Of a DNA stretch of 64,000 bases, positions 9,865-56,689 are shown piece by piece. The notes under the pieces are model-generated. The model was not told the origin of the DNA and ran no database searches. It was given only the letters and a program-made list of their open reading frames with translations. The stretch is from Macrostomum lignano (lineage: Eukaryota). Position 1 is the first letter of the stretch. Each line of letters begins with the position of its first letter. Where the stretch lies: assembly GCA_002269645.1 (NCBI GenBank), contig NIVC01001157.1, forward strand, positions 248,001 through 312,000. The letters are read 5' to 3'. The position numbers and the translations under genes are program-made.

Positions 9865-9879
9865 TTTTCTGTTACGAAA

Positions 9880-10194: not shown

Positions 10195-10409
10195 AAATGA
10201 ATTATTACTCAGTAACAGAAACTACATTTATTGTGAAAAATATATTTAAAAAAATGAAGGTAAATCGTATCAATGATACGCATGCTTTTCATGATTATTC
10301 CTATATCGGAAACGTGCCGGCCAATAATTATATTAGTAATAATATTGTTTTTCTTTGTTATAAAAAATTTACTACCCTGTTGCCTTAAGTAATTGTACGA
10401 ACTTAGTTC

Positions 10410-11300: not shown

Positions 11301-11915
11301 ATTTCACTTTAGATTGCAAGATCTTTTTAACCATCCACCGAGTTAATCTCTGGCTTACCGATAATCCCTGTAAATTATCTAATCCTTCAATCATTTTTCT
11401 ATCGGCTTCATGCTTTAATCTTATGCTTCCTCAGGAGAATTCTTGTCAGCATCTCTGTATGCTAAGTCATGATAATATGCTAACCAATCAATACCATTGA
11501 TGGGAATTGAATCAGCTTTTGGAGTATCATCAGGATTTAATCTCAAATCCAGCCTAGTCCCGGGTAGTTTGCCCTCAATCTTTCGAAAGAGGCTGGAGCA
11601 CACCTTAAGCGGTTAAATTACCACCCACCTCCGTCTGCTCTCTGAACCTTCTCCTTATACTTTTATACTTAGGAGCTTGACTGCGCATTGTCACCATGTC
11701 TTCAAGCTTGTTACCTTTGGGAAGAGGAGTTACCTCTGTTCCTTCAAAAGATTTCTCAATTGAAGTGGTACTTGAAGCTGTATGACGGGTTTCACGCAAT
11801 TTGAAGGTGTCGCCACAAATAGTGACTAGCAGTAGCTTTGCTTCTACCACTCAGGCCACGGGTTAACCTGTGAAGTTCATTGATGGTAGGTGTAGTTCCC
11901 CAGTATATTTTCCAG
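11280..11915 (-). pseudogene. Parvovirus-VP1u-like phospholipase A2 domain protein, split by a 301-bp insert and apparently in frame with the integrase
   Basis: ELHLPSMNFTG | PGTRLDLRLNPDDTP...PINGIDWLAYYHDLAY...EADRKMIEGLDNL...KVKFGLG. Contains the catalytic HDxxY motif. Confidence 0.8.
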
Positions 11916-11971
11916 TAGTAAAGATTGGTGGTAAGCCTGTTAGTCCTTTTTGAACATCTAAAAATCCACCT

Positions 11972-12605
11972 TCAAACAAAAGTTGGCTCATTTTTAATAG
12001 CCTTAAAAATACAAGTTAACACTAATTGTTTTGCAAATTCTTTAATTGTTGGTTTTTTAACAAATTTAGTTTTATTATCCATAGCAGCTAGGTATCTTTT
12101 ATTTGTCCAATGTTCCGACTTTTTAATTTGTTCCTCATTGCGATAATCAAAAGATGAAGCAGGAATAAAATGATCCACATGCAAAACACCAATATAATCT
12201 TTTGGCAAATAATAATGTTTGGTGAAATTTAACCAATCTTTAAAGAATTCAATTGGGCAACCAAGATAATAAATAGTATGGTTGTCTTTTTGACCATTAG
12301 TTGATTTTAATAGTTTATTTATTCTAGTTCGCGTGTTTACAATAAGTTTGAAATTTTCATCTTCACTATATCTTGTTTTTCTATATTGATTAACTTTTTC
12401 TTTATTGTTTTGTGCATATATTAACTTTCTCTATAATTTTTTCTTTATTTTCAGCATAATATCGAGGATAGCAAATATTCTTTTTGATAAAATTTCCCAC
12501 ATTCTTTGCAATTACCTTCATATCGATTCTGGGTTATTCTATATCTAAACTCAAGCAAAAAATTCTCTTCTTTACATCTACTACAGATCTTTTTAGTTTC
12601 CATTT
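11972..12605 (-). pseudogene. Zn-finger plus HNH endonuclease
   Basis: N-terminal KICSRCKEE...CKEC. C-terminal LHVDHFIP...HWTN...L..MDN..K (HNH signature). Frameshifted. Confidence 0.75.
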
Positions 12606-12627
12606 TATGAAAAAATAAATTTAACAT

Positions 12628-13305
12628 CTAAATAATTCCTGTATGTCCAGCAGCTTTGGCAGCGGCTAAAACAAGTTTTCGTGGAGTTTTAAATCCTTCG
12701 CCAACAGCTCGTTTGTTATTTATTGATTGATCAATCCTTTTATACAAACTAGTGTTTTTAACACCCCCTACTCCTAACTCATCATAAAAAAATTTAGCAC
12801 TTACTAATTCATCCACAGTATATAAATCAGGATTAAACTTTACTCTAGGGTTCATAATAATATTATATGCTTCACCCAATTCTCTATATAGCTCATTCCG
12901 ATTTTTATCAACCCCACCAATTCGATAATTATCATTATCTAAATCCGTCACGCTAATACTTTGTGGAGAAGCTCTCTGATATTGTTCCCTACCACCCAGT
13001 TCTGCAGCCCTAATCTCTGCAACTCTCAATTGTGCTTGATCAACATCATAAGCGGGCGGTTCATCCTCAATTACATCTTCCTCTTTTGGCTCCGTATTCT
13101 TAGCAATTTTTTCAAGAAGCTCTTTATCAGTTTTTGTTAATTCACTAATTTTCCCCGTAATAGGATTAACAAAAGGAGCAGCAAATCTTTCACCAGCTAA
13201 CTGTATTCCTAACTTTCTTTTTTGTAAATCCCTAACAAAATCAGAATATCTTTGTTTCTCTTTATAAATCGCTAATTCACCATCAACATCCATAAATTGA
13301 CTCAT
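12628..13305 (-). CDS. Hypothetical Polinton protein (225 aa)
   Basis: Long open AT-rich ORF divergent from the capsid gene. No motif recognised. Confidence 0.55.
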   Translation of the reverse strand: MSQFMDVDGELAIYKEKQRYSDFVRDLQKRKLGIQLAGERFAAPFVNPITGKISELTKTDKELLEKIAKNTEPKEEDVIEDEPPAYDVDQAQLRVAEIRAAELGGREQYQRASPQSISVTDLDNDNYRIGGVDKNRNELYRELGEAYNIIMNPRVKFNPDLYTVDELVSAKFFYDELGVGGVKNTSLYKRIDQSINNKRAVGEGFKTPRKLVLAAAKAAGHTGII

Positions 13306-13339
13306 TTTTTAACATAAAAAACTTTTTTAACTTAAAAAA

Positions 13340-13900
13340 ATGGCTGAAACAAAAAACAGATGGAGTGATAAGTATTATTTCAAAAAACCACGGCAATATA
13401 TCAATGAGGTCAGGGCAAAAGATTTAAATTATACCCTACCAACAAGCGATAATTCAAACAATTTTACTACCGGAACGGTAACTTTTGATGTTGGTGCAAC
13501 TAATACGATACTAATGCAACTAAACGCATTTTCCGTGTTAGATGCTTATATACACGAAATGACGGAACAGCTCTTGCGGCCGGCGATATAGCCGATCGTT
13601 CTGGTATTGTTATCGAGAAAGATTGGTTTTATAAATGTTTTTCCCAAGCGCAACTAAGAATTAACGGAGCTGAGGTTGAGACATCAACAAACCCCGCAGA
13701 GATTAATGGAGTTCTTAAACATTTAAATTATACTTATTTATCAAAACAGGTTGGTGATAATGTTGGATGGATGCCCGATAAGGGAGATGGTGGAGCAATA
13801 AATTTTCCTACCATAGCACCAGCAGCCGGCGCAGATACCGCTGCTCTTATTAATTACCTTAATACAAACATAGTTCCCGTTGTTGTTGAGCTGTTGAGCT
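13340..13900 (+). pseudogene. Major capsid protein (double jelly-roll), N-terminal part
   Basis: MAETKNRWSDKYYF...VTFDV...FSQAQLRINGAEVETSTNP...LKHLNY resembles Polinton MCP N-termini. Frameshifted and truncated where it meets the pPolB relic. Confidence 0.65.
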
Positions 13901-15142
13901 AATTTTTTGTACATTCAGCCGTATCTTGTTGTTTAGGACATTTGAGGGGTATGTTTGATGCTTCAAAATCAGCATATATTACAATTGGTTTTTTAATTGC
14001 CATAAAATGTTGTTGGAACTTTAATATTTGTTCTTTTTCATTGGGCATTACAACATTAGTAAATAATTAGGTTTTTAAGAGCACTTTCATTCTTTTTAAA
14101 TGTGAAACAATTTCTACATATTGGCATTCTATTTCCATTTGTTCTTAATAAGGAACAAATATCTTTTATGTATATATAATGTGTATTGTTTTCATGCTGT
14201 ATGTACAATAAATCGATTTGGTCTGGTGCTGTTATATCAGTTGCTGGCTTAATAAGAAAACATCTTTTTTTTATATCATTCTTTATCGTGTGCTTTAACC
14301 CAATCGTTTGGCTGTTCAATTGAAAATACATTAATATTTAACCCATTCATTTTTTCAATCTTATATATATCATCTATGGATACTGGGTAGGATATGTCTT
14401 TCATTATTATTTCATCCACATAATCTCTAATAATATATTTTATTTACATGCCATTTTACTTGTTTGTGATATTTTTGAATTAGTAAACACCATAATAAAC
14501 ACTTATCATCTTCATTGTTGGGATTTATGATCATGGGAGATGTAAATCCTGGATCCATATGTGATCGTCCTCGAAGAACTTCAATAGGAACAATCTTTAC
14601 TGTGGCTGAGTTATAAGAAACAAAAATGAAGCCTGATCCGTTTTCTGTCATCTTATCAATCCATTTATCAAACTCTGCTTCGATATTATCAAATTGTTTG
14701 GTATATGTTCCCATTGATAAAAGTGACTTATATGATTCTTGTGAAAAGGTATTTATTACTTCAATTTCTGAAATTGCATTTATCATATTTGGTTTTTTAA
14801 ATTCTGTTTCAATTTCAATTTTATACCTAACTGGCTGCCGTTTGTTATTTTGTCTCATAGTATATTCGTCTAATACGGTCTTTAATTTTTCTTTCATTTG
14901 TTTAAAATATTCTTTATAATCTGTATTCATATCAATATTAATATTTATTATTTCAGCACCATTCGCTGGTGGTGATGCTGTTTGTTCGATAATATCTAAT
15001 TGTGTTTGTAAATTGATTTCATTTTCTGCTCTAATTCTAGCTTCTATTTCCGCCCTATCGGCAATTCGTTGTGCTTTGATTTGAGCTATTAATTGAGCTC
15101 TAAGTTCTGGGTTGTCGATTTGAGCTAAAATATTTCCATTTT
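13900..15142 (-). pseudogene. N-terminal region of a second, AT-rich pPolB
   Basis: ENGSGFIF, LRGRS, IINPNNEDDKCLLWCLL, IDLLYI...HYIYIKD...ICRNCF, and ExoI VIYADFEAS immediately before truncation. Confidence 0.85.
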
Positions 15143-15194
15143 ATAGAATAAAATTTATACAATGTTTGAATTATTGGTTTTTTAATTTTATGTT

Positions 15195-16123
15195 TTGGGC
15201 ATCCTGACCCTCCCCACAGGAGCTTATTCGAGTTCCGCTTTTGGTAACAGTAAGCCACTACCCATAACGTTTGCATTTAAGAAGATTCCTGAACCTGCTT
15301 TTGGTCGCATTTCGAGATATAATCCGCTTCCGTCATGTTTTTTAATTATGTTAAAATCTTTTCCTAATTTATTAAAAATTTTCTGAACCGCAGGTCTAAA
15401 ATTAGCTCCGATATTGTCGAAAAATCCTTTAGCTTCTTCGCCGGTTTTTCCAAGGTTTGACCGAATTCATGAAATTTGTCTGCGACAACTCCGCTTCCGT
15501 GGGTCATTCCTTGCAAGATTAAACCCTCACCGTGAGTTGTTCCTTTTAAAATTAAACCTTTTCCGGCTGCTAACCTAGCTTCTGCATTTTTTTTGTTCTG
15601 GTGTTGCTGAACTACTATTAATTGTGTCTATAAGTTTTTGTTTGAATTGTGCGTCCTGCGTTATTTGCTGTCTTTGAAATTCTGCATCTCGTTTAGCTTT
15701 TTCATCCGCAGCTTTTTTGTCATTTACTGCTTTTGCAACTCCAGCCGCTCCACCAGCGACTCCTTCAGCCGCGGCAATTCCTCCAAAAATTATTGGGAGC
15801 AAAGTTGCAAGTGGAAGTATGCCCCCTTGTTTTTCTTTTAATTTTGCTCACTGTTTTCGGTTATCATGAATCCTTTTGCCTGCTAAACCGGCTGCTCCTG
15901 CTGCCCCAAGTCCTAAAAGGATTGGTAGAAAGGGTAGTAATCCACCATCCCTTTTTATGTGAGTCTCCATTAAAAATTTTACATCAGAATCTGTTAGCCT
16001 ATAGGTTTTACGGTTGTGCTTAAATGAAATGGGTCTTCCTTCTTGTGCATATTTTGCAGCGAGTTTAAAAGTATCAATATCATAATCCAATTTTTTACCT
16101 AAACGATCTAATCTTTTTAACAT
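15195..16123 (-). pseudogene. Cluster of small core-protein-like (pX/pVII-like) genes
   Basis: GGLLPFLPILLGLGAAGAAGLAG; LPIIFGGIAAAEGVAGGAAGVAKAVNDKKAA; repeated GSGLYL/GSGIFL/GSGLLL. All are typical of Polinton core proteins. Confidence 0.65.
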
Positions 16124-16345
16124 TGAGTGACTATGTTTGTTATCATCTAAATTTAAGGTGTCTACTATTTCTCCTATAAAATAAAGACGATACTACTAAG
16201 CAACGGTAGATCCGTCGATTTTGGAGGTGGGGTGGGTGTCAACCCTCCTCGCCTCTCATTGGCTGGCGCCCCGATCACTAGGTGATAGATACCCGTATCG
16301 ATATCGGCGCTCGGCGCGCGCGCGCCGCAGGCGCGTGGCGCCAAG

Positions 16346-17746
16346 CGCCGCAGGCGCACCTACCGATATGTACCGATATGTATGCTCACCCTACCGACAT
16401 GTACCCCGATATGTACACCCTCCCGAGCCGCAGGCGCACCCTCCTGAGCCGCAGACGCCCATGCCGCAGGCGCCCCGAGTGTACACTCTCCCGAGCCAAA
16501 GGTACACTCTCCCCAGTACACTCTCCCCAGTACACTCTCCCGATATGTACACTCTCCACAGTACACTCTCCCGATATGTATGCATACACAGATATGTAGT
16601 CAACGATATTAGGCTAGTGAAAACTACTTATAGTAGGTGAAATTGAGTATATTTACATAAAAATGTAGATAAAACATATTGGTAGGTGAATAATGACGCA
16701 TATTACATATTAAAATGTACATATTGGAGCATATGAGCAGCAAAAACACACAATGTAGGTGCATATTTGACAGAAATAGACAAAGCAGGTACTGTAAGCA
16801 CTACATAGGTGGTAATACACACAGTATAAAGTAGGTTTACAAAGTGTACTTTCGATACATATCGGATTAATGTATAAAGCGGGTTTACAAGGCATGCATA
16901 TATCAGAAGGTGTAGTTGTATAATACAGGCGCGCATGTATAATCAGATTATAGGCAAACGCCCAGGTGCAATTTCAACAGACGCGTAAATAATGTCACAC
17001 CGACTAAAGAGTAAATATTGTCTAACCCGCAGGTGCATAAATATTAAACAAAAGCGGTTCGGGGAAATCCCAAAAGGGAGGTTTTAGCCGCCCGTTTTCG
17101 CCGCCCTAACCCTCTTATGGGTACAATTGCGTTGAAAATATTTCAAGTCATTAGGTTGTAAGACCCTCCATATTTTAGGTGGGTGGACTCGAGCCCGGGG
17201 CCAGCCCATTACAGTTTTTTGGGCCGGCCCCTCTGCCAATTTCCTCCCTAGGTGCGAGCTATCAGAATTGGTCTTTTAACCCCCGTGTATACACACATAG
17301 AGGCCCCCCAGCTAGCGTCCCATTCTAACCTACCCAGTGTACAGTGTTGGGTTCCCCAAACCGCGTACAAAGAGAAATACCTTATCAGTCAATCTCCATA
17401 CGCTCCCTCAGGGCTGTCTCGTACGCGGCCTCTTCCTCCACGCTCTCGAAGCAGTAGTCGGATGACTGGCAATGTGGAAATTATAACAGTCAATGTAGAT
17501 AGAATATAGGCAAGGTATATGATTAGATGAGTTGTGTATACAGTGTAATATCTTACCAAACCTAAATCCTCCTCCAGCCGCCACAGGCGTAGAGACGCTG
17601 TATAGCGCACCAACGAAAGGTGCTCCTCCCAGTTGGTAGACCGGATAGCTACTGCAGGCTCATCCCACGCAGTCGGGCGCGCTCCCGGACCGGCCAGGTA
17701 CGCCTCCGAGTCGGGGGCATACGAATTACGCCCTATTAGCCAATCC
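16346..17746. repeat. Left arm of 4-kb inverted duplication
   Basis: Reverse complement of 18972-20381; identical ORFs appear on opposite strands (16703-16936 vs 19805-20038). Confidence 0.97.
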
Positions 17747-18321
17747 TGGTGTAGCGTCTCCGCCTCCAGCACCTCCCGCAGATCAGCCCCTCGGGCCACC
17801 AAAGTATCAAGAACCCGATTAAAGGCTCTGACAAAGGTGGCTTGGGAGGGCAGGCCGCCAGGGTGGCGAGACCTCAACCAGTCAATGTCCCCGCGGAAAA
17901 ATGAGGCCACAATGCGAGGAAAGCGCTCACGAACCACGGCGATCTCCTCAGACATATCCTCGTCCTCATCGTCGAAGAGAAGGAGCGTAGAGGCTGATGA
18001 TATTGAGGCCCGGTGGGAGGTAGTTGAAGCAGAGGCGGCAGCGGCAGAGACGGGCGCAGTAGAGACAGAGGCGGCAGCAGCAGCAGGGGCGCCGTTCACA
18101 ACCCCGCCGATAGCCAGCAGCGGGAGGTCAAAAACTTCAGAGTCGGTGTCGCTATCATAGGACATGGCCCAAGCTAGATATTGATCAGCCTCCCAATTAT
18201 CGGTTCCGTTGTTTTCAGTGCCTAGGGGAACTATGTGTTCAGGGATATCACCCTCGAGGCTGGTTAACTCTTCAGTCGGGCGATTATTATCCCAGAGGTT
18301 GGATAGAGCTCGGCGGGCCAT
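17389..18321 (-). CDS. Hypothetical 310-aa protein with acidic and Ala/Ser-rich N-terminal half
   Basis: Open ORF downstream of CCAAT/TATA elements (18330-18430). Its start (MARRALSNLWDN) is conserved at 23053 (MSRRALFNLWDN). Confidence 0.7.
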   Translation of the reverse strand: MARRALSNLWDNNRPTEELTSLEGDIPEHIVPLGTENNGTDNWEADQYLAWAMSYDSDTDSEVFDLPLLAIGGVVNGAPAAAAASVSTAPVSAAAASASTTSHRASISSASTLLLFDDEDEDMSEEIAVVRERFPRIVASFFRGDIDWLRSRHPGGLPSQATFVRAFNRVLDTLVARGADLREVLEAETLHQDWLIGRNSYAPDSEAYLAGPGARPTAWDEPAVAIRSTNWEEHLSLVRYTASLRLWRLEEDLGLVRYYTVYTTHLIIYLAYILSTLTVIISTLPVIRLLLRERGGRGRVRDSPEGAYGD

Positions 18322-18432
18322 GTTGGAATCAACAGAGAGTAAAGTATTAGAGCTAGGATAGGTTCGACTCTCCAGAGAGGAAACACTAATTATATAGACG
18401 GATCGAGTGAGGCGGTGCGAACCAATAGGAAA

Positions 18433-18966
18433 CTAGCAGTCCCAACCCTCGTTATACAGATTTTCCCAGGGCGGAGATTGGTAGGGTTTGAGACCCACAA
18501 GCTGAAGAACATCCTCCTCAGTCCTGGCTACCGGAGGCGTGTCTGTCTTGACTCGCTTGGCTGGAGGGGGTGCCTCAGGTACCGGCTTGAAGAGCTTGTC
18601 CAAACGGGCGGCAAACATCCTGCGCCACAGTTCAGGCGTGAATTCGATCGTGTAGCGCCAATTAAACTTTGGGTCCTGATTGAGCCAATTGCGCAGCAAA
18701 CGGATCCTCCCTCGCGAAGCTTCAACTGCCTTGAAATTGCCCAACAGGACCCGCTTGTTCACGTGAAGGCGGGCAGCAGCCTCCAGGTCAGGGCGCGCAG
18801 CTTCGAGCTTCTTCCACTCTGGCTCGCTCAAGTAGATTGCAGGGAAGCCGTCCTTCCACACTCCGGCCTCGTTGGTGTAGAGACGCCGAATTTCAATCAA
18901 GTTGTGTTCAGTTTCAAATGTGGGCTTCCGCGCCACAAAGTTTTCGTATAGAGAGATAGAAGACAT
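18433..18966 (-). CDS. PC4-like ssDNA-binding protein (probably tandem domains), copy 1
   Basis: LIEIRRLYTNEAGVWKDGFPAIYLSEPEWKKL follows the PC4 pattern (IDIREYW...G..KPG..GISL...QW..L). A second degenerate unit ends IEFTPELWRRM. A conserved paralogue is at 22401-22946. Confidence 0.7.
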   Translation of the reverse strand: MSSISLYENFVARKPTFETEHNLIEIRRLYTNEAGVWKDGFPAIYLSEPEWKKLEAARPDLEAAARLHVNKRVLLGNFKAVEASRGRIRLLRNWLNQDPKFNWRYTIEFTPELWRRMFAARLDKLFKPVPEAPPPAKRVKTDTPPVARTEEDVLQLVGLKPYQSPPWENLYNEGWDC

Positions 18967-18971
18967 GATTT

Positions 18972-20381
18972 GGATTGGCTAATAGGGCGTAATTCGTATG
19001 CCCCCGACTCGGAGGCGTACCTGGCCGGTCCGGGAGCGCGCCCGACTGCGTGGGATGAGCCTGCAGTCTGCTATCCGGTCCGGATAGCTACTGCTATCCG
19101 GTCTACCAACTGGGAGGAGCACCTTTCGTTGGTGCGCTATACAGCGTCTCTACGCCTGTGGCGGCTGGAGGAGGATTTAGGTTTGGTTAGATATTACACT
19201 GTATACACAACTCATCTAATCATATACCTTGCCTATATTCTATCTACATTGACTGTTATAATTTCCACATTGCCAGTCATCCGACTACTGCTTCGAGAGC
19301 GTGGAGGAAGAGGCCGCGTACGAGACAGCCCTGAGGGAGCGTATGGAGATTGACTGATAAGGTATTTCTCTTTGTACGCGGTTTGGGGAACCCAACACTG
19401 TACACTGGGTAGGTTAGAATGGGACGCTAGCTGGGGGCCTCTATGTGTGTATACACGGGGGTTAAAAGACCAATTCTGATAGCTCGCACCTAGGGAGGAA
19501 ATTGGCAGAGGGGCCGGCCCAAAAAACTGTAATGGGCTGGCCCCGGGCTCGAGTCCACCCACCTAAAATATGGAGGGTCTTACAACCTAATGACTTGAAA
19601 TATTTTCAACGCAATTGTACCCATAAGAGGGTTAGGGCGGCGAAAACGGGCGGCTAAAACCTCCCTTTTGGGATTTCCCCGAACCGCTTTTGTTTAATAT
19701 TTATGCACCTGCGGGTTAGACAATATTTACTCTTTAGTCGGTGTGACATTATTTACGCGTCTGTTGAAATTGCACCTGGGCGTTTGCCTATAATCTGATT
19801 ATACATGCGCGCCTGTATTATACAACTACACCTTCTGATATATGCATGCCTTGTAAACCCGCTTTATACATTAATCCGATATGTATCGAAAGTACACTTT
19901 GTAAACCTACTTTATACTGTGTGTATTACCACCTATGTAGTGCTTACAGTACCTGCTTTGTCTATTTCTGTCAAATATGCACCTACATTGTGTGTTTTTG
20001 CTGCTCATATGCTCCAATATGTACATTTTAATATGTAATATGCGTCATTATTCACCTACCAATATGTTTTATCTACATTTTTATGTAAATATACTCAATT
20101 TCACCTACTATAAGTAGTTTTCACTAGCCTAATATCGTTGACTACATATCTGTGTATGCATACATATCGGGAGAGTGTACTGTGGAGAGTGTACATATCG
20201 GGAGAGTGTACTGGGGAGAGTGTACCTTTGGCTCGGGAGAGTGTACACTCAGGGCGCCTGCGGCATGGGCGTCTGCGGCTCAGGAGGGTGCGCCTGCGGC
20301 TCGGGAGGGTGTACATATCGGGGTACATGTCGGTAGGGTGAGCATACATATCGGTACATATCGGTAGGTGCGCCTGCGGCG
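18972..20381. repeat. Right arm of 4-kb inverted duplication (carries the 3' half of the 310-aa ORF)
   Basis: See left arm. The arms differ only by rare SNPs and small indels. Confidence 0.97.
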
Positions 20382-20528
20382 TATGTGATGTGAGCTGGGT
20401 TAATTTTTTTTTCGCTTCGTGATAAAATTGAGTTCTTCTTATATGCATTTATATAACATTTAGCTGCGTGGGTGGGGTGATGAATGTCCACATTCCATTT
20501 AGCTGCGTGGGTGGGGTGATGAATGCCC

Positions 20529-20595
20529 ACATTCCATTAAGGCCAGATTTTTGAAAACGAAAACGAAAACGAAAAATCTGGCCTTAATGGAATGT
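20529..20595. other. Perfect 24-bp stem-loop with a (GAAAAC)n loop
   Basis: ACATTCCATTAAGGCCAGATTTTT-GAAAACGAAAACGAAAACG-AAAAATCTGGCCTTAATGGAATGT. Confidence 0.9.
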
Positions 20596-20649
20596 TGAGT
20601 GCGTGGGTGAGCTGGCTAAAAATAGCTTCTATTCTTTCTCTACCATTCT

Positions 20650-21005
20650 AGACCCTTTGCGCCTGCGGCGCTGGCGACGGTTAGAGAGTGTTAGTGTGTG
20701 TTTGGATGTAGTAGTATGTAAAAGTACGCTTCTAGATCAGATCCTATTGAAACAATGGATTTGAAGGGCTAGAGGGGGGACATGGGGGTTTGATTTCTGA
20801 TGTGAGGATTTGATTGGGTGTGTTAATAGTGTTTTTGATTAAATGGGGTTATTGGGGGTATTGGGGGTGTTTAATTGTGTTTAATTGTGCTGTTTAGTGT
20901 TTACATGTGTTTTTTTTATTCCCCCCCGTGTCCCCCTCTCTAGCCCTTCAAATGTGCTGTTTAATAGGTGCCTCTGGGTCTGGAAGCGTACTTTTACATA
21001 CTACT
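20650..21005 (-). repeat. Right TIR of the inner Polinton
   Basis: Reverse complement of 9510-9864; ends ACTACT followed by the TSD CACCAC. Confidence 0.95.
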
Positions 21006-35574: not shown

Positions 35575-35589
35575 AAAGTGAAGCTGTGC

Positions 35590-38800: not shown

Positions 38801-39043
38801 AGTTAAAATTTGGTTGACGCGGAGGATTAAAAGCACTATAAAATTCACTCAGTTTTTTGTCTCAAAAATGGGTAACAATCAGTTAAAAAAACAAACGGAT
38901 AAAGTTCAAAAAGCAAAAAAAATAAAAACTTCATTAACAAAATTAAGACAACTTCAAGCCGAAAAAACGAAAAAGGAACTATTAAAACCACCAACGAATA
39001 AACAAACAAAATCAAAAAAGTTTTTCAATAACTTAAAATAACT

Positions 39044-40580: not shown

Positions 40581-43174
40581 GCAGCTATTCAACACGTTCG
40601 TTTTAATAGCATATTTGGGGGGAGGGGTAGAGCCAACCGGGAGTGGCTACCATCGCCGCTCGCGCTATGACAAGAAACAGCTGCCATACCTATTCCGATC
40701 AACACCCACCCGCCACACAGCAAAATACCACGCGTAAAAATATCTATTTTAATGCAGTCTAAGTCTTAAGCGTATTGTAACGACATTCTACAATTGCCTA
40801 ATGATTTCTGCAAAGTTATAGTAGCTGTCGTAATCTTTTACGTAGGTGACTCCATACTTGAGAAACCAGTGTCTTTGGAGAGCTAGATTAACATTAGGGA
40901 CATTTATTGTGTAGTCGGGCCAATATTTCCTCATGTACTCGCTGCATTCTAGTTTGCATCGGTACTTACTCTTGTAATTAGGCTCGCGCGCCTTATAATA
41001 AGAACCTGGAGAGACGATTGAAGCATTTTTATTGAGAATTTATTTTTTTGCGGAGGATGAGCACTCTATTGAGTTTGGGGATTGGCGCTAATTTGATTGT
41101 CTTAGCACACTTTTTGCAAGGCTGGGAGGCTCCTTATGAGACTAATATTTTGTGCTATACTGCGTAAATTTTTGATAATAAAAGTAGAAGTTAGAATAAT
41201 TTTTTTAGAGGCAGGTACCCTTTTTGCGGGAATAATAAAGTTATTTTTGAGGCTGTGATATTTTTTGTCCTAGAATACTATGCTCACAGAACGCAACTCA
41301 CAAACTGATCTGGAATAATAAAAGTACAGAATTTAGAATATGGAGACAGATTTTTTGGAGAGGCATGTGACGTTCTTAGTTGTAGGTTCCAAAAAAGATG
41401 GTGAACTCAACAATGGCGGAGTAGATTTCTAGCGGTAGCACTTGGCAATTCAGCGGCAAGATAAATAAGGGCCGCAGCTTGTTTATTGTAATTGTAAATA
41501 TAAGTTAGTACAGAGGCTATGGCACGCGGGGGCGCTGGCGACTGCAACAATGGGTTTGAATTTAATAGATTAAGTAGGATGATGAGCAGATTGATGAAGG
41601 TGATGCAAATAGTAGAGCGATGGCGGTGAGTAGACAGTGATGGCAGTCTTCGGTGGCAAACTGGCAGGTAGGAAGGCAGCGTAGCAGGGCCTAGCGAAGG
41701 TAAGGCTAGCCCGCGGTGGAGTGAGACAGAGAGAGAAAAGAAGGCATAAACAAGTCTGGCCCAGACGGAGCGGGGCCGTGGCGAGAGATAAGGAGATAAC
41801 AAACTGAGAGCCAGAGCGCGCAAGCCGAGGAGAGGAGTGAAGGAAGGAAGGAGAGGGGGGAGAAAAGAGAAAACCCCTAGCCCGCCGCCAGGCGGGGTTA
41901 ATAAAGGAGCGCAGGAGGGTTAGCATAATATATGCGCGGAGTTTCCATTGGCTGGCGGTGGAAAAGCAAAAACAAAAAGTATCGATCGCGCGAAGACCCT
42001 ACAGACGTACGCAAAGATTACAATGTACGCAATGATTAGCAATTGATACAGATTCGTTGGGCGCTACTACAAGTAAACGTGCGCATACAAGATTGGAGAA
42101 TGTTAAATGAGAAATTGTAGTCCAACGGCCCTTTTGCGGGACCACTTTAAACTGACAACGTCACAGGCAGGTACCCTATTTTCCTGATCTCTTCGGGAAG
42201 AATGAAGTTAATCGTTGGTGCATTATGGAGGCTGCGATAATTTTTGTCCTATATAGCCCCTTTCGCATACTACTTTTGCAAGATATACTCTGAATGAATA
42301 CAAATATGGGGGGCGTTTACAATCGGTGTATTTTAATATTTCTTCTTTCCGCCGGAAAAAAGAGGACTTCTTGTTTCCGCCGGATTCCGAATCGCCATCT
42401 CCATTCTTGTCACTTGCTTTCAGAACGAGAGTGTCTAGTGTCTTCTTGAAATACTCACGATCATCTTTCCGAAGATCGTTTAGGAGAAGCGTGAGCGAAG
42501 TCTCAGTCTTCTTAGTTAAATTCTTCAAATGTGTCATTATAGACCATATTTCTTTATCAGCCATTTCAAGCACTGCGAAATAAAATATTTGCTAAAGAAG
42601 GCGGAAACTAGAAAATGAAGAGCCAGATTCTCAAGGCAGCAAAGATTTAAATAAACACATTCCAGAATCTTCTTGAAGTGGGTTGATAAATGGCTGTTCG
42701 CAGCTAATCTAAACCTTTAATTCTTTGCATGATGCTGGAGGCTTTTTGAGTGAGTCATAGAGTATAGAAGACAGAGGGTGATGGATATATAGAAAGTAAA
42801 GTGATATGAAAGAAGCCATGATTCTTAGTCATCGTGACAACAATGTCTACAATTCGAATACATTCAGTCGCACAGGGTAAAAGAGAATTTTTTTGAAATT
42901 CAGAAGAAATTCTATTGTGCAAAAATCTGCATCAGAAGTTTATTAATGTTTTAGCTTTTCATTGTTAACGAATAAATTGTAACTTCTGTTGGGGTTACTA
43001 TCGTTAAATTGGTTGACACTTTCATATTGTTTATTCTTGAAAATAGATTATATTAACCCCCTAAACCACACATTTCTCATGGTTTTACTCACGAACTCTC
43101 GAAAATTGCACTTTTTATAATATTTGAAAATCACAAAAAATCACTGTTTTCAGACCATTTTCACGTGTTTTTAG

Positions 43175-43634
43175 TCAATTTCACATATCTTTAGTGATTT
43201 TTAAATGAGTGAGGGCATGAAGCGAGGGAACGCTTCTTTTTTGAAAGTATAAAAATTCTGAAAAAATCTGTGTTTCGCATGCCCTCACCCTCAACACCCT
43301 CAATATATATATATAAATATACTAAATATAATAAATATAAATATATATGTCGTATATATATAGCTCGTATGGATACAATATCTGTGAAAAAAATCTGTGT
43401 TTCGCATTCCCTCACCCTCAACACCCTGTATTGTATGTATATTGTATGTATATATTGTATGTATTGTATGTATATTGTATGTATATATATATATGTATAT
43501 ATTGTGAGGGTGTTGAGGGTGAGAGCATGCAAAACACAGATTTTTTCAGAATTTTTATACTTTCAAAAAAAGAAGCGTTCCCTCGCTTTCATGCCCTCAC
43601 TCATTTAAAAATCACTAAAGATATGTGAAATTGA
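43175..43634. repeat. Inverted duplication (~130-bp arms) around a TA-rich core
   Basis: TCAATTTCACATATCTTTAGTG... is inverted as ...CACTAAAGATATGTGAAATTGA. An additional partial direct copy sits at 43381-43425. Confidence 0.9.
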
Positions 43635-43864
43635 GTTGCAGTACAATACAGTTGCAATATATATTTTTATTGTATTTATATTGTATTATATTTATTGTAT
43701 TTATATTATATTAGTATATTTGTATTGTTGATTATATTTATATATTTATATATTATTTATATATTTATATTCACATGTTGTGTATATTCACAACAATATA
43801 TACAGTATATATTCACACACACAATATTTATCCCCCCACCCACTTGCAACTGCGACTTCCTGGT

Positions 43865-43960
43865 AGTAGTAGCATGATGTAAGGGGATGAGTCATCTGCG
43901 AATGGAGCGAACTGCGCCCGAGCGATCAATGTGGCTCCTCCCCTTACATCATGTACTACT
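43865..43960. other. Terminal hairpin AGTAGT...ACTACT (96 nt)
   Basis: AGTAGTAGCATGATGTAAGGGGA pairs with TCCCCTTACATCATGTACTACT (one bulge). Confidence 0.85.
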
Positions 43961-45700: not shown

Positions 45701-45802
45701 CACGCCTTTTTACATGACTCAGAATCGAACTTTTCATAGTTTACTTTTCAGTGAATACTTTGTACATTTCATCACCACTGTCTATGTCGCGGAGTATGAG
45801 TG

Positions 45803-46600
45803 CTACCTTGTACCAAGAATCATAGTCTTGGTCTTGGTTTTTGTGTGCATTATATTTAACAACTTTGAAACTCCTTCACAAGTGGGTGGTGGAACGTCGC
45901 TTTTTAGTGCCTTTTTATCGGATTCTTGGTTTTCCGTTTTATCCTGTGGCTTAATTAATCTATTTATCTCATCAAGAATTACATCTGGCATGTCTATTAA
46001 GCCTTCGGGCTTTATATGTTTGTATTCCTTAATTTTACCATTCACATAATAGAAACCTGGTGGAGCAAATACTAAAGCCGGAATATCAAAACCCACTCTT
46101 TGTTGAATTTTTTTTTATCTATCTACCTTGTTAAAGTAAAAGTGGTGACCCTTGTTTGTCTGAACAATCCAATCACAATGAGTCATACACAGTTCATTCA
46201 ACTCAGGGCATAGGTCAGCATCATCAATATCGATTACGGTTATATTTGAATTTCGAGTATCTATCCAAATCATGTTGTCTACCTCTGGTCGAAATGGTGG
46301 GGAGGTTGAATTCCTATCTGCTTTGGTTGGCATTCCTGACGGTATTTTTTTCTTTGTTTTACTATTCCATGTTATACTGCAACTTCCGAATCTAAAATTA
46401 AGTTCTCCATAGAGATTAATTAGTTTATCGTACAATTTTGTTTGTTTTAAATTTCTCAACCTTGGTGGTGGGGCATCATGGTTTTGAAGGGGATCCTGTA
46501 CGATCACAGGAGAGAAACTTAAATCGTTTTGATTTTTTCCTTCCATTTTATTAAAAATAAATTTAACAATATAATTCATCAGTTGCAATGTACTTCTCAA
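45803..46600 (-). pseudogene. Primase-polymerase (Prim-Pol, AEP superfamily) domain gene
   Basis: NITVIDIDD (DxD), VQTNKGHHFYF (sxH motif), then after a poly-A frameshift GFDIPALVFAPPG and MPDVIL. Confidence 0.78.
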
Positions 46601-48789: not shown

Positions 48790-49129
48790 TAATTTACTAT
48801 CGTTAAATTGGATGACACTTTCATATTGTATATACCTGAAATTGCATTGAATTGACCCGTGAATCCAACTTTTTTCATGGTTTTACTCTCGAAATCGTGA
48901 AAATTGCACTTTTTTTAATATTTGAAAATCACAAAAATCGCTGTTTTCAGACCATTTTTCCATATTTTTATTCATTTTCACTTATTTTTAGCGATTATCA
49001 AAATGAGTGAGGGCATGAGGGCGAGGGCACCCTCCTTTTTAAAAAGTATAAAAATTCTGAAAAATCTGTGTTCTGTGAAATATACCACAGGCCAATGCCC
49101 CCACATACCCCCACCCTCAACACCGTCAC

Positions 49130-49168
<39 letters not shown>

Positions 49169-49323
49169 ATAATATTTATATTTTTATACTTATCACACAC
49201 ACCTTGCAACAATGACCTCCTGGTAGTAGTAGTGTTATATAAGGGGCTGAGTCATCCAGCGAGCTGGCGCGCAATGCGCCCGAGCAATAAGTGTGGCGCA
49301 GCCCCTTTTATCATACTACTACT
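48790..49323. repeat. Subterminal region plus 99-nt terminal hairpin (49225-49323) of the same Polinton-like family
   Basis: Homologous to 43000-43280 and 43840-43960. AGTAGTAGTGTTATATAAGGGGCTG pairs with CAGCCCCTTTTATCATACTACTACT. Confidence 0.8.
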
Positions 49324-52640: not shown

Positions 52641-55496
52641 CGGTCGAACTGTGTAGTGGCATCCGCTCGTTTGGCCGGGCTCGGATTGCGGCACTGATAG
52701 CCTCGCCCAGTTCTGTTCGGCTGAACAAGCGAGGCGGCGATGAAGCGGGTGATGGGTGGCAAAAACGCGGCGTCGGAGGCGTGGGCGGTGTCGGAAAGTC
52801 GTCTAAATTTACGACAACCGACTGCGGCGGCGGCGACAATACTCCTAAATACTGAGCAGGAGGCGGTGAGTTCTGATGAGGCGGCGTGTGTAAGACGTCG
52901 ATCCGTGGATCGAAAAGAGCTGGCGGGGCCGCGTTTGGCGAAGCCTGTGCGCCTGGGGCCATCAGCTCTTGAAGCGCTGGGAGCAACTCCTCGCTGGGCT
53001 CCTCTTGTAGAGAGCTCGACAGGCTGCTGATTAAGTCGAGCACATTCCCGGCCTTATTCAGGCGCTGCTGCACCGGTGAGCTGCGAGCCGGTGGCTCCGT
53101 GGGTGGCTGCGCTGGTGGGTAACCAGGCCGAACTGGCGAGGTTGCGGCCTCCGCGATTTGTCAGTAGTTGGTAGCCGGGTACCAGCAGCAATCACCTGCG
53201 GTGGGTCAAGCCGGGGCTTGATGGCGGCGGCTCGCTCTCTGGCGACCGCTAGGCGATCGCTAAGGTGAGGCGGCTGCAGCGGTGCTTGCATTTCGTTGTA
53301 CCAGGTTGAGGCTTGAATACCACTGAGCTCCTTTCAGTTTGGCGAAGGTTTCTTGAAGGTGCGGGATCGGGTACGGGTGCTTCAGCGTCACATCGTTGAT
53401 CGCTCTGAAGTCGTGCACAATTCGAATCGTCTTGTCCTTCTTTGGTACTAGGATCATCGGCGAATTGTAGCTGGAGTACGTTGGCCGTATGATGCCCTTC
53501 TTCAGCATATCATCGAGCATCTGATCCAATTGCGGTCGTAGATGCGGAGGTATCCGGCGAGGAGGAATCGCGATTGGCGTCGAGTCTGTGAGCACTATCT
53601 CATGAGTTACCAGGTGTGTCAGTCCGTGGTCCACTGGAGTAGAAAGAATGCCTTCTCGCATTCCTTGAGTAAATCTTGAACCTGGTGCCTCTGGTGGCTG
53701 TTCAGCTGGTCTCCGATGTCGACCTCGTTGATCCAACTGTCAGTCGTTTCTTCAGCCGTTAGCAGTTGACGGACTTCTGGCTCATTCGACTCGCTGAAGT
53801 ACTCGAGGTCCTGGGTCTTGAGTGGCGTAACTCCCATTAGCATGTTGCGACGCAAGTGAACCTCTGTATCTGATGGGTTAAGTACTTCCATCACTCCTCG
53901 ACCTTCTGTCATCGTATGCAGGACCGGGGCTGCGTCTAACTGGTGATGCTTCGCTTGCAGTCCTGATTTGAGTGGTTCGATAATCATCGGTGAACCGTAG
54001 TTCTGCTGATGACCTTCGGCTAGTTTAATGGCGACGAGGCAGGAACATTGAGGCGGCAGAGTGCATTTTTCAGCGACGTACACTCGGCAGGCCTTCAGTT
54101 CTCTCCTTGAATAGCGTACCGGAAGTCGGGTGCCTTGTCGAAATGTGAGCATTCCTTGCTGGAAGTCTAGTCCTTGGCAATGACTCCGCATGAAATCAAT
54201 TCCTAAAAGATTTTCACAGTCTCCTTTGGCGACGAAGAATTCGGTTTCCGCGACATAGTCCCAGAATTCAACTAATAGGATAACCTTGGCGGCGAGACTT
54301 AACTCGGTCCCGTCGTACATAGCGACTCAGTTAGGGTAAGCAGGTGCAACTATACAACGTGGTGGACGACGCCTAATGGCGGCCCAAGTGGACGCTCCGA
54401 GGAAGTTTCTTCTGCTTCCGCTGTCTAGCAGAAAAGCGACCTCTCGTCGAGCCACTCGTCCTGTAATAAATGGATCGGCGTCATGCGCATGGACTGTATT
54501 TACAAAGGAGGCGTTCACGAAACCTCCATCGACCGTTTCTTCGATTACTGACGACTCGGACGAGTCAGCTACCGCCGCTCCGGGGCCATACTCTTCCGGG
54601 TAGTGTTCGGGTAGTGTTCGGCTGTGGCTTGCTGTGCCAACGTGTTGAGTAGATGCTGCCGCTGCTGCATCATTGCAGATTGTTGCTCAACGACTTTTTC
54701 CAACTTCGAAAGGGCGCTGTTGTTGGGCTCCTTTGAGGCTTGTCCCTTCCCGTCCAACATTCTGACCGGGGGCTCGTTTGAACGATGAGCCAGGTCTTTG
54801 GCTAGTCCATCCTCTTCAGTGCTCGCAATGCTTCGCTGAGTGTCGTAGGTCGGATCCAGAAAAGTTTCTCGCGGCAGTCTGATTGAAGAGTTGATTCGGG
54901 AGGTGATCAGTCACCCGAAAACTCCCACTTCCAGACACTTAAGCCTGGGAACAAAATCAGTGATCACTTACTGTGGCGGGCTCTTCTTCTGTGTCGGGCA
55001 GGTTCTACGAGCTCCTTCCTTGTTTCTTCTTTGTTGCGCGCGTTTGTAGAGTTCGCTTCTTCCAATCTTCTTCTCCGGAGGAATCTTCTTGAAGTCTTCG
55101 AAGTCCAAAGTCGGCCGAGAGTGAGAGCAGAACAGTGAAGTTGACGTCGAAATATCTCCTTGAGTGCGGGATTCAGTACGTTTCTCGAGTGTCAAATCAC
55201 TATCAACAGTGCGCCCTAATAAGCTCAAATTCTAACGCGAGGTCCTCCAAAGGGGGCGTCTTCTTCTAGATCTAACGGAATCGGAGTCGTGTGCTCCTAT
55301 CGGTTAATCTAGGATAATCCAAATCAACAGTCAGTAATCCTCTAAGGGTATCGGAATCGTTCCGCAGATCCTATCCAATCCCTTAAGAAAATGGGAGGCC
55401 TCGAATAGTCTCAGTAAAGTCAACGGATCAGCAACGGCCGGCCGGCAATAAAATCGCTCTCAGTAGTATAGGAAAAGTAGGTTTGAGCGCAACCCA
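52640..55496 (-). mobile_element. Ty3/Gypsy relic (gag, protease, start of RT)
   Basis: Protease FLLDSGS, LLGIDFM, linker, RT start IPPHLR...MLKKGIIRPTYSSYNSPMILVPKKDKTIRIVHDFRAIN. Deleted downstream. Confidence 0.85.
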
Positions 55497-55499
55497 TTT

Positions 55500-55690
55500 T
55501 GAAAAATCACAAAAAAACAGATAAAAATCGACTAAAAACAGGTGAAAATTGTCTGAAAACAGTGATTTTAGTGATTTCAAAACTTTTGAAAAATTGCTTT
55601 TTGCGCGATTTCGTGACTAAAACCACAAGAAAGTTGTGATTCGTGGGTTAAAATAACCTATTTTCAGGTTTAATCATTTCAAAACTAGCA
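55500..55690 (-). repeat. Third, inverted copy of the subterminal region seen at 43050-43200 and 48830-48990
   Basis: Its reverse complement contains AATCACTGTTTTCAGACAATTTTCAC and GGTTTTAGTCACGAA. Confidence 0.7.
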
Positions 55691-56689
55691 TCAAATTTAA
55701 TAATAGTCATTTCTCCCATTGCATAACGCCCTTCAATAAGCCAATCTTACTAGCTTTGCTTTTAACGATCAGTCAGCTACCATCTATGCATAAAAATTGT
55801 CCACTCGAGGCAATACAATGCTTCTACAAAAGTCAATAATTTGCTCCACATTCGCTTTGTCCCGAGACTTTAAAATGGCTTTAATGCTGTTTTAGATTTT
55901 TACTTAAAGATAATAGAAGACATTCAAGAACATGGAGTGCTTATTTAAATTTTTCGTGGCATGCATACTCGACTACTAGAGCACTAACCGCAGCACTCAA
56001 CATTTCTATTGGCTGCCTAAATTTCTGCCAAAACCAAAATGTTTGCCAAAATTTCTGCCAAAAAGTGTTTGGTTTTGGCATCCAATAGGAGTGGCTCGTG
56101 CAAATCTTTTGTGTTCACCCTCTATCTAGCTGTAAAAAAGACATGAAGTGGGCCACGCAAGTTACAAACGAACAATGCTCGCAACCCTACCTACGGACGA
56201 TTTCACTAACCCTTTTCTAAATTATGTATCTTAAAAATGGAACAAAAAGTATGAGAAATTCTCCTCAAAGCAATTGTTATATTGTGACTCAGCTTTAACG
56301 TCGTGCGAAACCCACACTGAGTGGTCAAATAGTATGGTCAAATAGGCTCTCGCAGGAACTCTAACAATTGGTCAAGGACAGCTTCCATTACATAAAGTTA
56401 AATTTAATTCACGTAAATCAAAATTGCTTTAATGAAAATTAATTATAAAAATTTAAAAAAGATAACAGCGGAGATACTATTTTTTCACTCCTTAAAATCC
56501 GTTCTTAGGTTACACTTCGCATAACTTATGCAAATAATAATAATGGTTTTGTATTTTAAATATTAAAGTAGTGATTATTAAAACAGAAACAAAAAGTCCT
56601 CAAACGCCTATGAAGAACAAAATTAAAACATTAGAGCAATTTATTAATATTGACAAATTAGTCCATGGTCACCACAAGTCATCAATCAT

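What the first reader, a model, noticed from the sequence alone, without database searches (positions are those of the whole stretch)
43865..43960. ~97-nt terminal hairpins with AGTAGT/ACTACT ends in a second family
The copies at 43865-43960 and 49225-49323 follow the same upstream sequence (TTGCAAC..GAC.TCCTGGT). Their stems differ in sequence, yet each stays largely self-complementary. The 49225 copy has two small internal arms (CCAGC-GA-GCTGG and GCGCA-A-TGCGC), giving a T/Y shape like parvoviral ITRs. Pairing retained despite divergence suggests selection on structure.
Basis: partly seen in the sequence, partly recalled or inferred. Interest (0 to 1): 0.72.

Follow-up and report, generated by a model that had tools for sequence, protein, structure and literature searches.

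The report
Foldback tips of Maverick-type transposon ends
The two ~97-base hairpins are real. They are most likely the folded-back outermost tips of the ends of a Maverick/Polinton-like virus-like element in an animal genome, not parvovirus-type repeats, and they add an animal example to a terminal-palindrome feature reported recently in related elements of a protist.

Summary
Observation confirmed. 43865-43960 and 49225-49323 are imperfect palindromes (DNA fold -27.1 and -25.6 kcal/mol; z -7.5 and -5.6). Each follows the same 22-nt leader.

They are not independent units. Each is the last ~100 nt of a longer direct repeat (42995-43960 and 48794-49323), and homology stops exactly at ACTACT. 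A third copy in inverted orientation (55462-55707) also stops at ACTACT but has no hairpin.

AGTAGT//ACTACT is the published end motif of Maverick/Polinton elements. The window holds an 11.5-kb element (9510-21005) with that motif, 357-bp inverted ends, a perfect 6-bp target duplication, an integrase-like ORF, and a 294-nt foldback at each tip.

Three of 31 stem pairs changed on both sides (P about 0.002-0.003 under a simple neutral model). That rests on only two copies.

The parvoviral reading fails: the copies lie in direct orientation, I found no NS1 or VP genes, and the small T arms are not conserved.

No partner end or target duplication was found for this family, and no further copies could be retrieved.

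The parts
43865..43960 (+). Hairpin copy 1: 96-nt imperfect palindrome, AGTAGTAG...TACTACT. Its outer (3') arm is the terminus of repeat copy c1.
   Evidence: (dG -27.1, z -7.5). Homology to copy 2 stops at 43960.
43843..43864 (+). 22-nt non-palindromic leader of copy 1 (CTTGCAACTGCGACTTCCTGGT).
   Evidence: 18 of 22 positions identical to copy 2.
42995..43842 (+). Subterminal part of c1. It holds block A (about 42995-43303), AT/TG microsatellite, one direct duplicate (43388-43427) and one inverted duplicate (43507-43634) of the block A tail, then AT/CA-rich sequence up to the leader.
   Evidence: Self-BLAST; alignment; inverted repeats.
49225..49323 (+). Hairpin copy 2: 99-nt imperfect palindrome, AGTAGTAGT...ACTACTACT. 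Its outer arm is the terminus of repeat copy c2.
   Evidence: (dG -25.6, z -5.6). The end abuts a truncated unit of another repeat that starts at 49325.
49203..49224 (+). 22-nt leader of copy 2.
48794..49202 (+). Subterminal part of c2: block A (48794-49125) and (TA)n/(CA)n microsatellite (49126-49202).
   Evidence: 77% identity to c1 over 390 nt.
55462..55707 (-). Third end of the same family (c3), in inverted orientation. Block A is followed by about 30 nt and ...TATACTACT. It has no microsatellite, no leader and no hairpin.
   Evidence: (no fold: z -0.5).
45747..46600 (-). Fragment of a D5-like primase-helicase gene, between the two hairpins. Only the N-terminal primase (AEP) domain and the start of PriCT-2 remain. 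It has one in-frame stop and is truncated at its 3' side. Its link to the hairpin-bearing ends is inferred, not shown.
   Evidence: Pfam Prim-Pol E 0.002-0.004. 97 relatives, best E 1e-29. Relatives have Prim-Pol+PriCT_2+D5_N+DUF5906. Extent from tblastn.
9510..21005 (.). Reference case in the same window ('first family'): an 11,496-bp Maverick/Polinton-type insertion. Its termini are AGTAGTA.../...TACTACT. Its inverted ends are 357 bp and 98% identical (9510-9864 and 20650-21005). Each tip is a 294-296-nt foldback (9510-9803 and 20710-21005).
   Evidence: (dG -58.1, z -13.7).
9504..9509 (.). Left copy of the 6-bp target-site duplication CACCAC of the 9510-21005 element. The right copy is at 21006-21011.
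10528..11136 (-). Integrase-like ORF (retroviral-type catalytic core) inside the 9510-21005 element.
   Evidence: PDB sequence search: foamy-virus integrase core, E 3.7e-4, two colinear stretches. Pfam rve and rve_3 are below threshold (E 0.11).

Best explanation
The two hairpins are the outermost ~97 nt of the right-hand ends of a family of Maverick/Polinton-like (or PLV-like) integrating virus-like elements in an animal genome.

Anatomy. The outer arm, ending ...ACTACT-3', is the real terminus. The inner arm, starting AGTAGT, is an inverted copy of it placed directly inside the end. Further inward come a 22-nt leader, a microsatellite and a ~300-nt subterminal block.

Shown:
- The palindromes exist.
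- The end motif is AGTAGT//ACTACT.
- Homology between copies breaks exactly at the motif in three copies.
- One end interrupts another repeat.
- The same motif, together with foldback tips, a 6-bp target duplication and an integrase-like gene, occurs in a second element in the window.

Inferred:
- An rve-type integrase recognises the AGTAGT/ACTACT tip and inserts the element.
- When the end is single-stranded during replication, it snaps back into a hairpin. The hairpin either recreates a duplex end or offers a 3' end for complementary-strand synthesis.
- Copying one arm from the other keeps the arms complementary. That would explain the three pairs that changed on both sides.

I give about 0.6 to the identity (Maverick-type end tips) and about 0.25-0.3 to the replication role of the foldback.
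For: 1. The motif matches published Maverick ends. The most common end motif is 5'-(AGT)2//(ACT)2-3', and it comes with 6-bp target duplications (PMC8097293, read).
2. In this window, 9510-21005 has that motif, 357-bp inverted ends at 98% identity, a perfect CACCAC duplication and an integrase-like ORF. Each of its tips is a 294-nt foldback bounded by AGTAGTA and TACTACT.
3. All nine ends or arms start with AGTAGTA: outer and inner arms of both tips of the first family, both arms of c1 and c2, and c3.
4. In the finding's family, similarity between copies stops exactly at ACTACT in c1, c2 and c3.
5. The end of c2 cuts a unit of an ~80-nt repeat that is intact elsewhere.
6. c3 shows that the same end can exist without the palindrome.
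7. Three of 31 stem pairs are compensated, with neutral P about 0.002-0.003.
8. A D5-like primase-helicase fragment lies 2.2 kb inside the c2 end.
9. In Halocafeteria, palindromes at the extremity of inverted ends, next to target duplications, were reported for endogenous virophages and PLVs. They are preferentially found with non-pPolB replication genes and rve integrases. The authors proposed a hairpin-priming model (bioRxiv 10.64898/2026.07.28.741278).
Against: - No partner (left) end and no 6-bp target duplication could be found for c1 or c2. c1 and c2 are two right ends in tandem orientation, and c3 faces the wrong way to pair with either.
- No integrase, polymerase or capsid gene is demonstrably linked to this family. 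The primase fragment may belong to another relic.
- Only two hairpin copies exist, so the covariation signal is thin. The tool's own shuffle control cannot discriminate with two rows (74 of 500).
- AGTAGT is a simple trinucleotide repeat.
- Homology between the tip of c3 and the outer arm is weak beyond the first 7 nt.
- Nothing here tests replication.
Confidence: 0.6

Rival explanations
1. The 97-nt palindrome is a separate miniature element. It would consist of two Maverick end tips with the interior deleted, and it would have inserted once into an older repeat (block A, microsatellite, leader). It was then carried along when that repeat multiplied.
For: The palindrome carries a complete pair of end motifs, AGTAGT...ACTACT. 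c3 shows the host repeat without it.
Against: No 6-bp duplication flanks the palindrome: CCTGGT against CTTCTC in c1, and CCTGGT against GATATT in c2. Similarity between c1 and c2 ends exactly at the ACTACT of the palindrome, so the palindrome's own end served as the end of the whole unit. c3 also ends in TACTACT without the palindrome. The leader, arms and block A have similar divergence of 18-23%.
Confidence: 0.13
2. The palindrome is an inert by-product: a snap-back inverted duplication of the terminus made once during replication or repair. It has no role, and the compensated pairs are chance or local repair.
For: c3 lacks the palindrome, so it is dispensable for having this kind of end. 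Four stem pairs are broken, and the centre is the most diverged part, with 13 of 37 positions different. The Halocafeteria preprint names accidental annealing as an alternative.
Against: There are three compensated pairs, with neutral P about 0.002-0.003. An unrelated sequence family in the same window has the same arrangement at both of its tips. The feature recurs in several virophage and PLV subtypes.
Confidence: 0.17
3. It is a non-autonomous Helentron (HINE/DINE-1-like) rolling-circle element. The layout would be a left module ending in a microsatellite, then a right module with a 3' palindrome that acts as terminator.
For: The layout of left block, microsatellite, short right block and palindrome resembles HINEs (PMC4067079, PMC7492417). 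No target duplication was found.
Against: No subterminal inverted repeat links the 5' end and the region before the palindrome; the alignment scores equal the shuffles. HINE palindromes have 5-10 bp stems and lie 8-35 bp from the end. Here the palindrome is 96-99 nt and lies at the very end. The 3' flanking base is C or G, not T. No Rep/helicase was found among the ORFs scanned. The end motif matches Mavericks.
Confidence: 0.06
4. It is an endogenous parvovirus-like element bounded by T/Y-shaped inverted terminal repeats.
For: The hairpin length (~97 nt) and the 5.4-kb spacing are parvovirus-like. Copy 2 can form two small inner arms.
Against: Both copies have the leader on the same side, so they are direct and not inverted. 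The six-frame Pfam scan of 43961-48800 finds no NS1 or capsid domain. The inner arms are absent or reduced in copy 1, and the T fold is 3.3 kcal/mol worse than the unbranched fold. The hairpins are the ends of a 0.5-1 kb non-coding repeat with a third, hairpin-less copy. No match was found in the viral contig collection.
Confidence: 0.02
5. It is a host-encoded structured RNA, for example a repeat-derived microRNA precursor.
For: The hairpin has pre-miRNA size and some stem pairs are compensated.
Against: No Rfam family matches at the gathering or the relaxed threshold. Both strands fold about equally well. The hairpin's position, exactly at a repeat terminus with a transposon end motif, is explained better otherwise.
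Confidence: 0.02

Closest known systems
Maverick/Polinton elements (Kapitonov & Jurka 2006; Pritham 2007; end motifs in Barreat & Katzourakis 2021, PMC8097293)
   Same: The 5'-(AGT)2//(ACT)2-3' end motif. In the neighbouring element 9510-21005: a 6-bp target duplication, inverted ends of several hundred bp and a retroviral-type integrase.
   Different: For the finding's family I found no paired ends, no target duplication, no protein-primed polymerase and no integrase. The tip is a palindrome, which the papers I read do not list as a Maverick feature. The only replication gene nearby is a primase-helicase fragment.
Endogenous virophages and polinton-like viruses of Halocafeteria seosinensis with terminal palindromes (bioRxiv 10.64898/2026.07.28.741278)
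   Same: Palindromes within the inverted ends at their extremity, next to the target duplication. They are associated with non-pPolB replication genes (D5 primase-helicase) and rve integrases. A hairpin-priming model has been proposed.
   Different: That host is a protist, and the example palindrome given is 52 nt. Here the genome is animal-like, the palindromes are 97 and 294 nt, the ends carry the Maverick AGT/ACT motif, and the copies are decayed, unpaired ends.
HINE/DINE-1 non-autonomous Helentrons (PMC4067079, PMC7492417)
   Same: A modular non-coding repeat: left block ending in a microsatellite, then a short right block with a 3' palindrome. No target duplication.
   Different: No subterminal inverted repeats. 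The palindrome is about ten times longer and lies at the very end. There is no TT target and no Rep/helicase partner.
Parvovirus inverted terminal repeats
   Same: The size of the hairpin, and the idea that a terminal foldback can prime DNA synthesis and keep its arms complementary.
   Different: No inverted pair, no conserved T/Y arms, no NS1 or VP genes. The hairpins are embedded in a longer non-coding terminal repeat.

Membership tests
Maverick/Polinton | Conserved end motif 5'-(AGT)2//(ACT)2-3' (or (AG)3//(CT)3) | tested here: met
   c1, c2 and c3 all end in ACTACT where homology stops. All nine arms or ends begin with AGTAGTA. The motif is as stated in PMC8097293.
Maverick/Polinton | 6-bp target-site duplication | tested here: inconclusive
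   No partner end is in the window, and the 6-mers next to c1, c2 and c3 have no mate. It is met for the neighbouring element 9510-21005 (CACCAC).
Maverick/Polinton | Two terminal inverted repeats delimiting one element | tested here: inconclusive
   c1 and c2 (right ends) and c3 (a left end) share block A in inverted orientation, but they are not arranged so as to delimit an element.
Maverick/Polinton | Encodes a protein-primed family B polymerase and a retrovirus-like integrase ('by definition', PMC5499653 abstract) | tested here: not met
   Six-frame Pfam of 43961-48800 gives only Prim-Pol. ORFs left of c1 and between c2 and c3 show no PolB; the one rve hit, a fragment at 52320-52694, is not tied to this family. 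These copies are therefore not filed as Polintons proper, but at most as Maverick/PLV-type ends or derivatives.
Maverick/Polinton | Capsid, packaging ATPase and protease genes | tested here: inconclusive
   No Pfam hits. ORF 39032-39457 looks adenain-like by eye only: Pfam and PDB searches were negative and the AlphaFold model was too poor to search (pLDDT 39.6).
Endogenous virophage/PLV with terminal palindromes (Halocafeteria type) | Palindrome inside the inverted end at its extremity, adjacent to the target duplication | tested here: met
   The palindrome occupies the last 96-99 nt of c1 and c2. In 9510-21005 the 294-nt foldback abuts the CACCAC duplication. For c1 and c2 the duplication itself could not be verified.
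Endogenous virophage/PLV with terminal palindromes (Halocafeteria type) | Non-pPolB replication gene (for example D5 primase-helicase) in the same element | tested here: inconclusive
   A D5-like primase-helicase fragment lies at 45747-46600, 2.2 kb inside the c2 end. That it belongs to the same element is not shown.
Endogenous virophage/PLV with terminal palindromes (Halocafeteria type) | rve integrase | tested here: inconclusive
   Present in 9510-21005. None is tied to the finding's family.
HINE / Helentron | 11-15-bp subterminal inverted repeats near the 5' end and before the 3' palindrome | tested here: not met
   Local alignment of the 5' 100 nt against the reverse complement of the 3' 170 nt scores 14-16, and the shuffle medians are 14-15.
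HINE / Helentron | Short 3' palindrome (5-10 bp) 8-35 bp from the end; insertion between T and T | tested here: not met
   The palindrome is 96-99 nt and lies at the very end. The 3' flanking base is C (c1) or G (c2).
Parvoviridae-type ITR | Hairpins at both ends of a 4-6 kb genome encoding NS1 and capsid | tested here: not met
   The copies are in direct orientation. No NS1 or VP domain appears in any of the six frames.
Parvoviridae-type ITR | Conserved T/Y-shaped fold; flip and flop forms | tested here: not met
   The inner arms are not conserved and the T fold is less stable. Both copies have the same orientation, so flip/flop cannot be judged.

The most novel reading that the evidence does not exclude
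Animal Maverick/PLV-like elements of this kind have self-folding hairpin telomeres. These would be used for hairpin-primed, rolling-hairpin-like replication tied to a primase-helicase replicon rather than to a protein-primed polymerase. Hairpin transfer during replication would keep the arms complementary, and the three compensated stem pairs would be its footprint. The foldback would also let single, unpaired ends persist. That would be a replication mode shared with parvoviruses and poxviruses, arising inside the polinton/virophage lineage.
Probability: 0.2. Interest if true: 0.75.

Novelty: new member of a known kind. Interest (0 to 1): 0.45.

Why it matters
How Maverick/Polinton-like elements and polinton-like viruses replicate is inferred almost entirely from their gene content. 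Terminal palindromes have only just been noticed, in endogenous virophages and PLVs of one protist, where they were proposed to prime replication.

This window holds the same architecture in an animal-like genome, in two families unrelated in sequence. Both carry the canonical Maverick end motif, and one shows signs that the arms co-evolve. That suggests the foldback tip is a recurrent feature of these ends that may be maintained, not an accident.

If so, the question can be tested by descriptive surveys. One can ask which replicon types carry tip palindromes, and whether the arms covary.

In practice, the result also shows that AGTAGT...ACTACT palindromes in animal assemblies should be annotated as Maverick-type ends, not as MITEs or parvoviral ITRs.

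Tried and rejected
- **More copies, DNA searches.** Two scans of the viral contig collection with hairpin patterns found nothing. The single metagenome scan with the conserved core gave 23 loci. All were an unrelated conserved gene or chance hits, and none had the flanking stem.
- **More copies, protein route.** A protein search with the spurious ORF that spans hairpin 1 found no candidates. An exact look-up of the mariner ORF found no contig, so the source genome is not in the collection.
- **More copies, in the window.** A covariance model of leader plus stem, run with filters off, found only the two copies plus generic hairpins.
- **Rfam.** No family matched at the gathering or the relaxed threshold.
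- **Helentron/HINE reading.** Rejected: there are no subterminal inverted repeats, and the palindrome has the wrong size and position.
- **LTR reading.** I considered that the two direct repeats could be LTRs. I rejected it by reading the sequence: no TG...CA ends, no primer-binding or polypurine sites, and no target duplication.
- **A 5.4-kb element from 43865 to 49323.** Its ends are similar (20 of 24), but the flanking 6-mers do not match.
- **Partner ends.** Searches using the flanking 6-mers and the interrupted ~80-nt repeat found none.
- **Primase fragment.** The word-based protein search found nothing, and PDB and PHROGs searches found nothing. Only the exhaustive HMMER search found relatives.
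- **Contigs of primase relatives.** Most are short, and none has AGTAGT palindromes.
- **Protease-like ORF 39032-39457.** The AlphaFold2 model had pLDDT 39.6, so I ran no fold search.
- **hAT transposase search.** It showed only that the genome is animal-like. The best named hits are echinoderms and a barnacle at 37-43% identity.

Full report
**What is there**

The window is animal-like and dense in transposon remains.
- It contains a hAT ORF, a mariner ORF, reverse-transcriptase and RNase H pieces, a family-B polymerase fragment and Transposase_21/DUF4218 ORFs.
- It has no tRNA genes and no Rfam family.
- The best named relatives of the hAT protein are from echinoderms and a barnacle, at 37-43% identity.
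- The source genome itself is not in the searchable collections.

At 43865-43960 and 49225-49323 lie two imperfect palindromes of 96 and 99 nt.
- Each follows the same 22-nt leader.
- As single-stranded DNA they fold at -27.1 and -25.6 kcal/mol. That is 7.5 and 5.6 standard deviations below shuffled sequence.

**The hairpins are the ends of a longer repeat**

Self-comparison shows that each hairpin closes a longer direct repeat: 42995-43960 and 48794-49323. The repeat has four parts:
- a ~300-nt block A, 77% identical between the copies;
- a variable AT/CA microsatellite, which in the first copy also holds direct and inverted duplicates of the block A tail;
- the leader;
- the hairpin.

Similarity stops exactly at the last ACTACT in both copies. 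Beyond the second copy, from 49325, a truncated unit of another ~80-nt repeat begins. That repeat is intact at 29.5 kb, so this end interrupts it.

A third copy of block A lies inverted at 55492-55707. It runs on for about 30 nt and also stops at ...TATACTACT (55462). It has no microsatellite, leader or hairpin.

The family therefore has three ends in the window, and all three terminate in ACTACT. Two are right ends with a foldback tip. One is a left end without it.

**What the ends are**

AGTAGT at one end and ACTACT at the other is the most common end motif of Maverick/Polinton elements, where it accompanies 6-bp target duplications (PMC8097293).

The window supplies its own reference case, the element at 9510-21005:
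- It is bounded by AGTAGTA... and ...TACTACT.
- It has 357-bp inverted ends that are 98% identical.
- It is flanked by a perfect CACCAC duplication.
- It contains an ORF that matches the catalytic core of a retroviral integrase in two colinear stretches (PDB search E 3.7e-4). Pfam rve is below threshold.
- Each of its tips is a 294-nt foldback bounded by the same two motifs (dG -58.1, z -13.7).

All nine arms or ends of the two families begin with AGTAGTA. Otherwise the two families are unrelated in sequence.

A 2026 preprint on endogenous virophages and polinton-like viruses of Halocafeteria reports this arrangement:
- The palindromes lie within the inverted ends, at their extremity, next to the target duplication.
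- They occur preferentially in elements with non-pPolB replication genes and rve integrases.
- The authors propose a hairpin-priming model and name accidental annealing as the alternative.

Between the two hairpins, the only recognisable coding remnant is the N-terminal part of a D5-like primase-helicase at 45747-46600.
- It carries one in-frame stop and is truncated at its 3' side.
- Its relatives have Prim-Pol, PriCT-2, D5_N and DUF5906 domains.
- One relative sits on a scaffold with a virophage-type capsid domain.
- Whether the fragment belongs to the element that ends at 49323 is not shown.

**Is pairing maintained?**

On a common 31-pair stem:
- 22 pairs are invariant;
- 3 changed on both sides and stayed complementary;
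- 2 changed on one side to a wobble;
- 4 are broken in one copy.

Given 12 stem substitutions, three or more compensated pairs occur in 0.2-0.3% of simulations with independent substitutions.

The leader (4 of 22 positions different), the arms (13 of 62) and block A (23% diverged) have diverged to a similar extent. The centre has diverged more (13 of 37). The palindrome therefore predates the split of the two copies.

The pattern fits arms that co-evolved while the lineage was active and then decayed separately after insertion. With two sequences this is suggestive only, and the tool's shuffle control cannot discriminate (74 of 500).

- The two small arms exist in the second copy only. The T fold is 3.3 kcal/mol worse than the unbranched one.
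- The copies are direct, not inverted.
- No parvoviral gene appears in any frame of the interval.
- No inverted partner exists in the window.

**Rivals**

- **Miniature two-tip element nested in an older repeat.** Disfavoured, because there is no 6-bp duplication around the palindrome and its own ACTACT serves as the end of the whole unit.
- **Helentron/HINE.** The modular layout fits, but it fails on subterminal repeats, palindrome size and position, and target site.
- **Inert snap-back duplication.** This remains a live alternative for function, though not for identity.

**Limits**

- No further copies could be retrieved.
- No paired ends or target duplications were found for this family.
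- No integrase, polymerase or capsid gene is tied to it. By the strict definition it cannot be filed as a Polinton.
- It works like, and carries the ends of, a Maverick/PLV-type element.

**Verdict**

This is a real feature. It is best explained as the foldback tip of a Maverick/Polinton-like end, which makes it a new member of a kind described only recently. Interest is moderate. The functional reading, hairpin-assisted replication, remains untested.

Noticed in passing
window 9510-21005: An 11.5-kb Maverick/Polinton-type insertion that looks recent. It has 98%-identical 357-bp inverted ends, a perfect CACCAC target duplication, 294-nt foldback tips and an integrase-like ORF (10528-11136). 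Pfam detects no polymerase or primase inside it. It also holds an inner 1.4-kb inverted repeat (16346-17746 and 18972-20381) and a perfect 24-bp hairpin at 20529-20595.
   Followed up: partly
window 7779-8522 (-): A weak DNA_pol_B_2 (organellar/viral family B polymerase) fragment just outside the left end of the 9510-21005 element. It is probably a relic of another Maverick-like element.
   Followed up: no
window 45747-46600 (-); L024, L029: A D5-like primase-helicase fragment. Its closest relative (41% identity) is on a 5.5-kb AT-rich metagenome scaffold. That scaffold ends in a perfect 20+20-nt palindrome and carries three ~130-nt internal hairpin repeats. Another relative sits on a 22-kb scaffold with a V18-19 capsid-type domain.
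   Followed up: partly
window 44968-45352 vs 30376-30761: A GC-rich block next to the truncated primase gene. It is about 50% identical at protein level to a stretch beside reverse-transcriptase and RNase H pieces, so a retroelement fragment probably replaced the rest of the primase gene.
   Followed up: no
window 39032-39457 (+): An ORF that, by eye, has an adenovirus-protease-like pattern of His, Gln and Cys motifs. Such a protease would be expected in a Maverick. Pfam and PDB sequence searches were negative and the AlphaFold model was too poor to use. Unverified.
   Followed up: partly
window 33136-36390 (-): An uninterrupted 812-aa hAT-type ORF (DUF4371 plus the hAT dimerisation domain). 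Directly upstream is a 96-nt tandem array (35615-36208) that is open in several frames.
   Followed up: no
window 49597-49934 and 49325-49425 / 29503-29640: Two repeats lie just outside the second hairpin. One is a 118-nt tandem repeat in three copies, each containing ACTACT and a small palindrome. The other is an ~80-nt repeat shared with 29.5 kb.
   Followed up: partly
window 25271-26332 (-), 28055-29364 (+), 37844-38338 (-), 52320-52694 (+), 58908-60880 (+): Other transposon remains: a mariner ORF, reverse-transcriptase and RNase H pieces, an rve integrase fragment, and Transposase_21/DUF4218 ORFs.
   Followed up: no
window 43388-43546: A 159-nt foldback (40-nt arms, 93% complementary) made by an inverted duplication of the block A tail within the first copy. 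It draws sub-threshold Rfam microRNA hits, which are not meaningful.
   Followed up: yes
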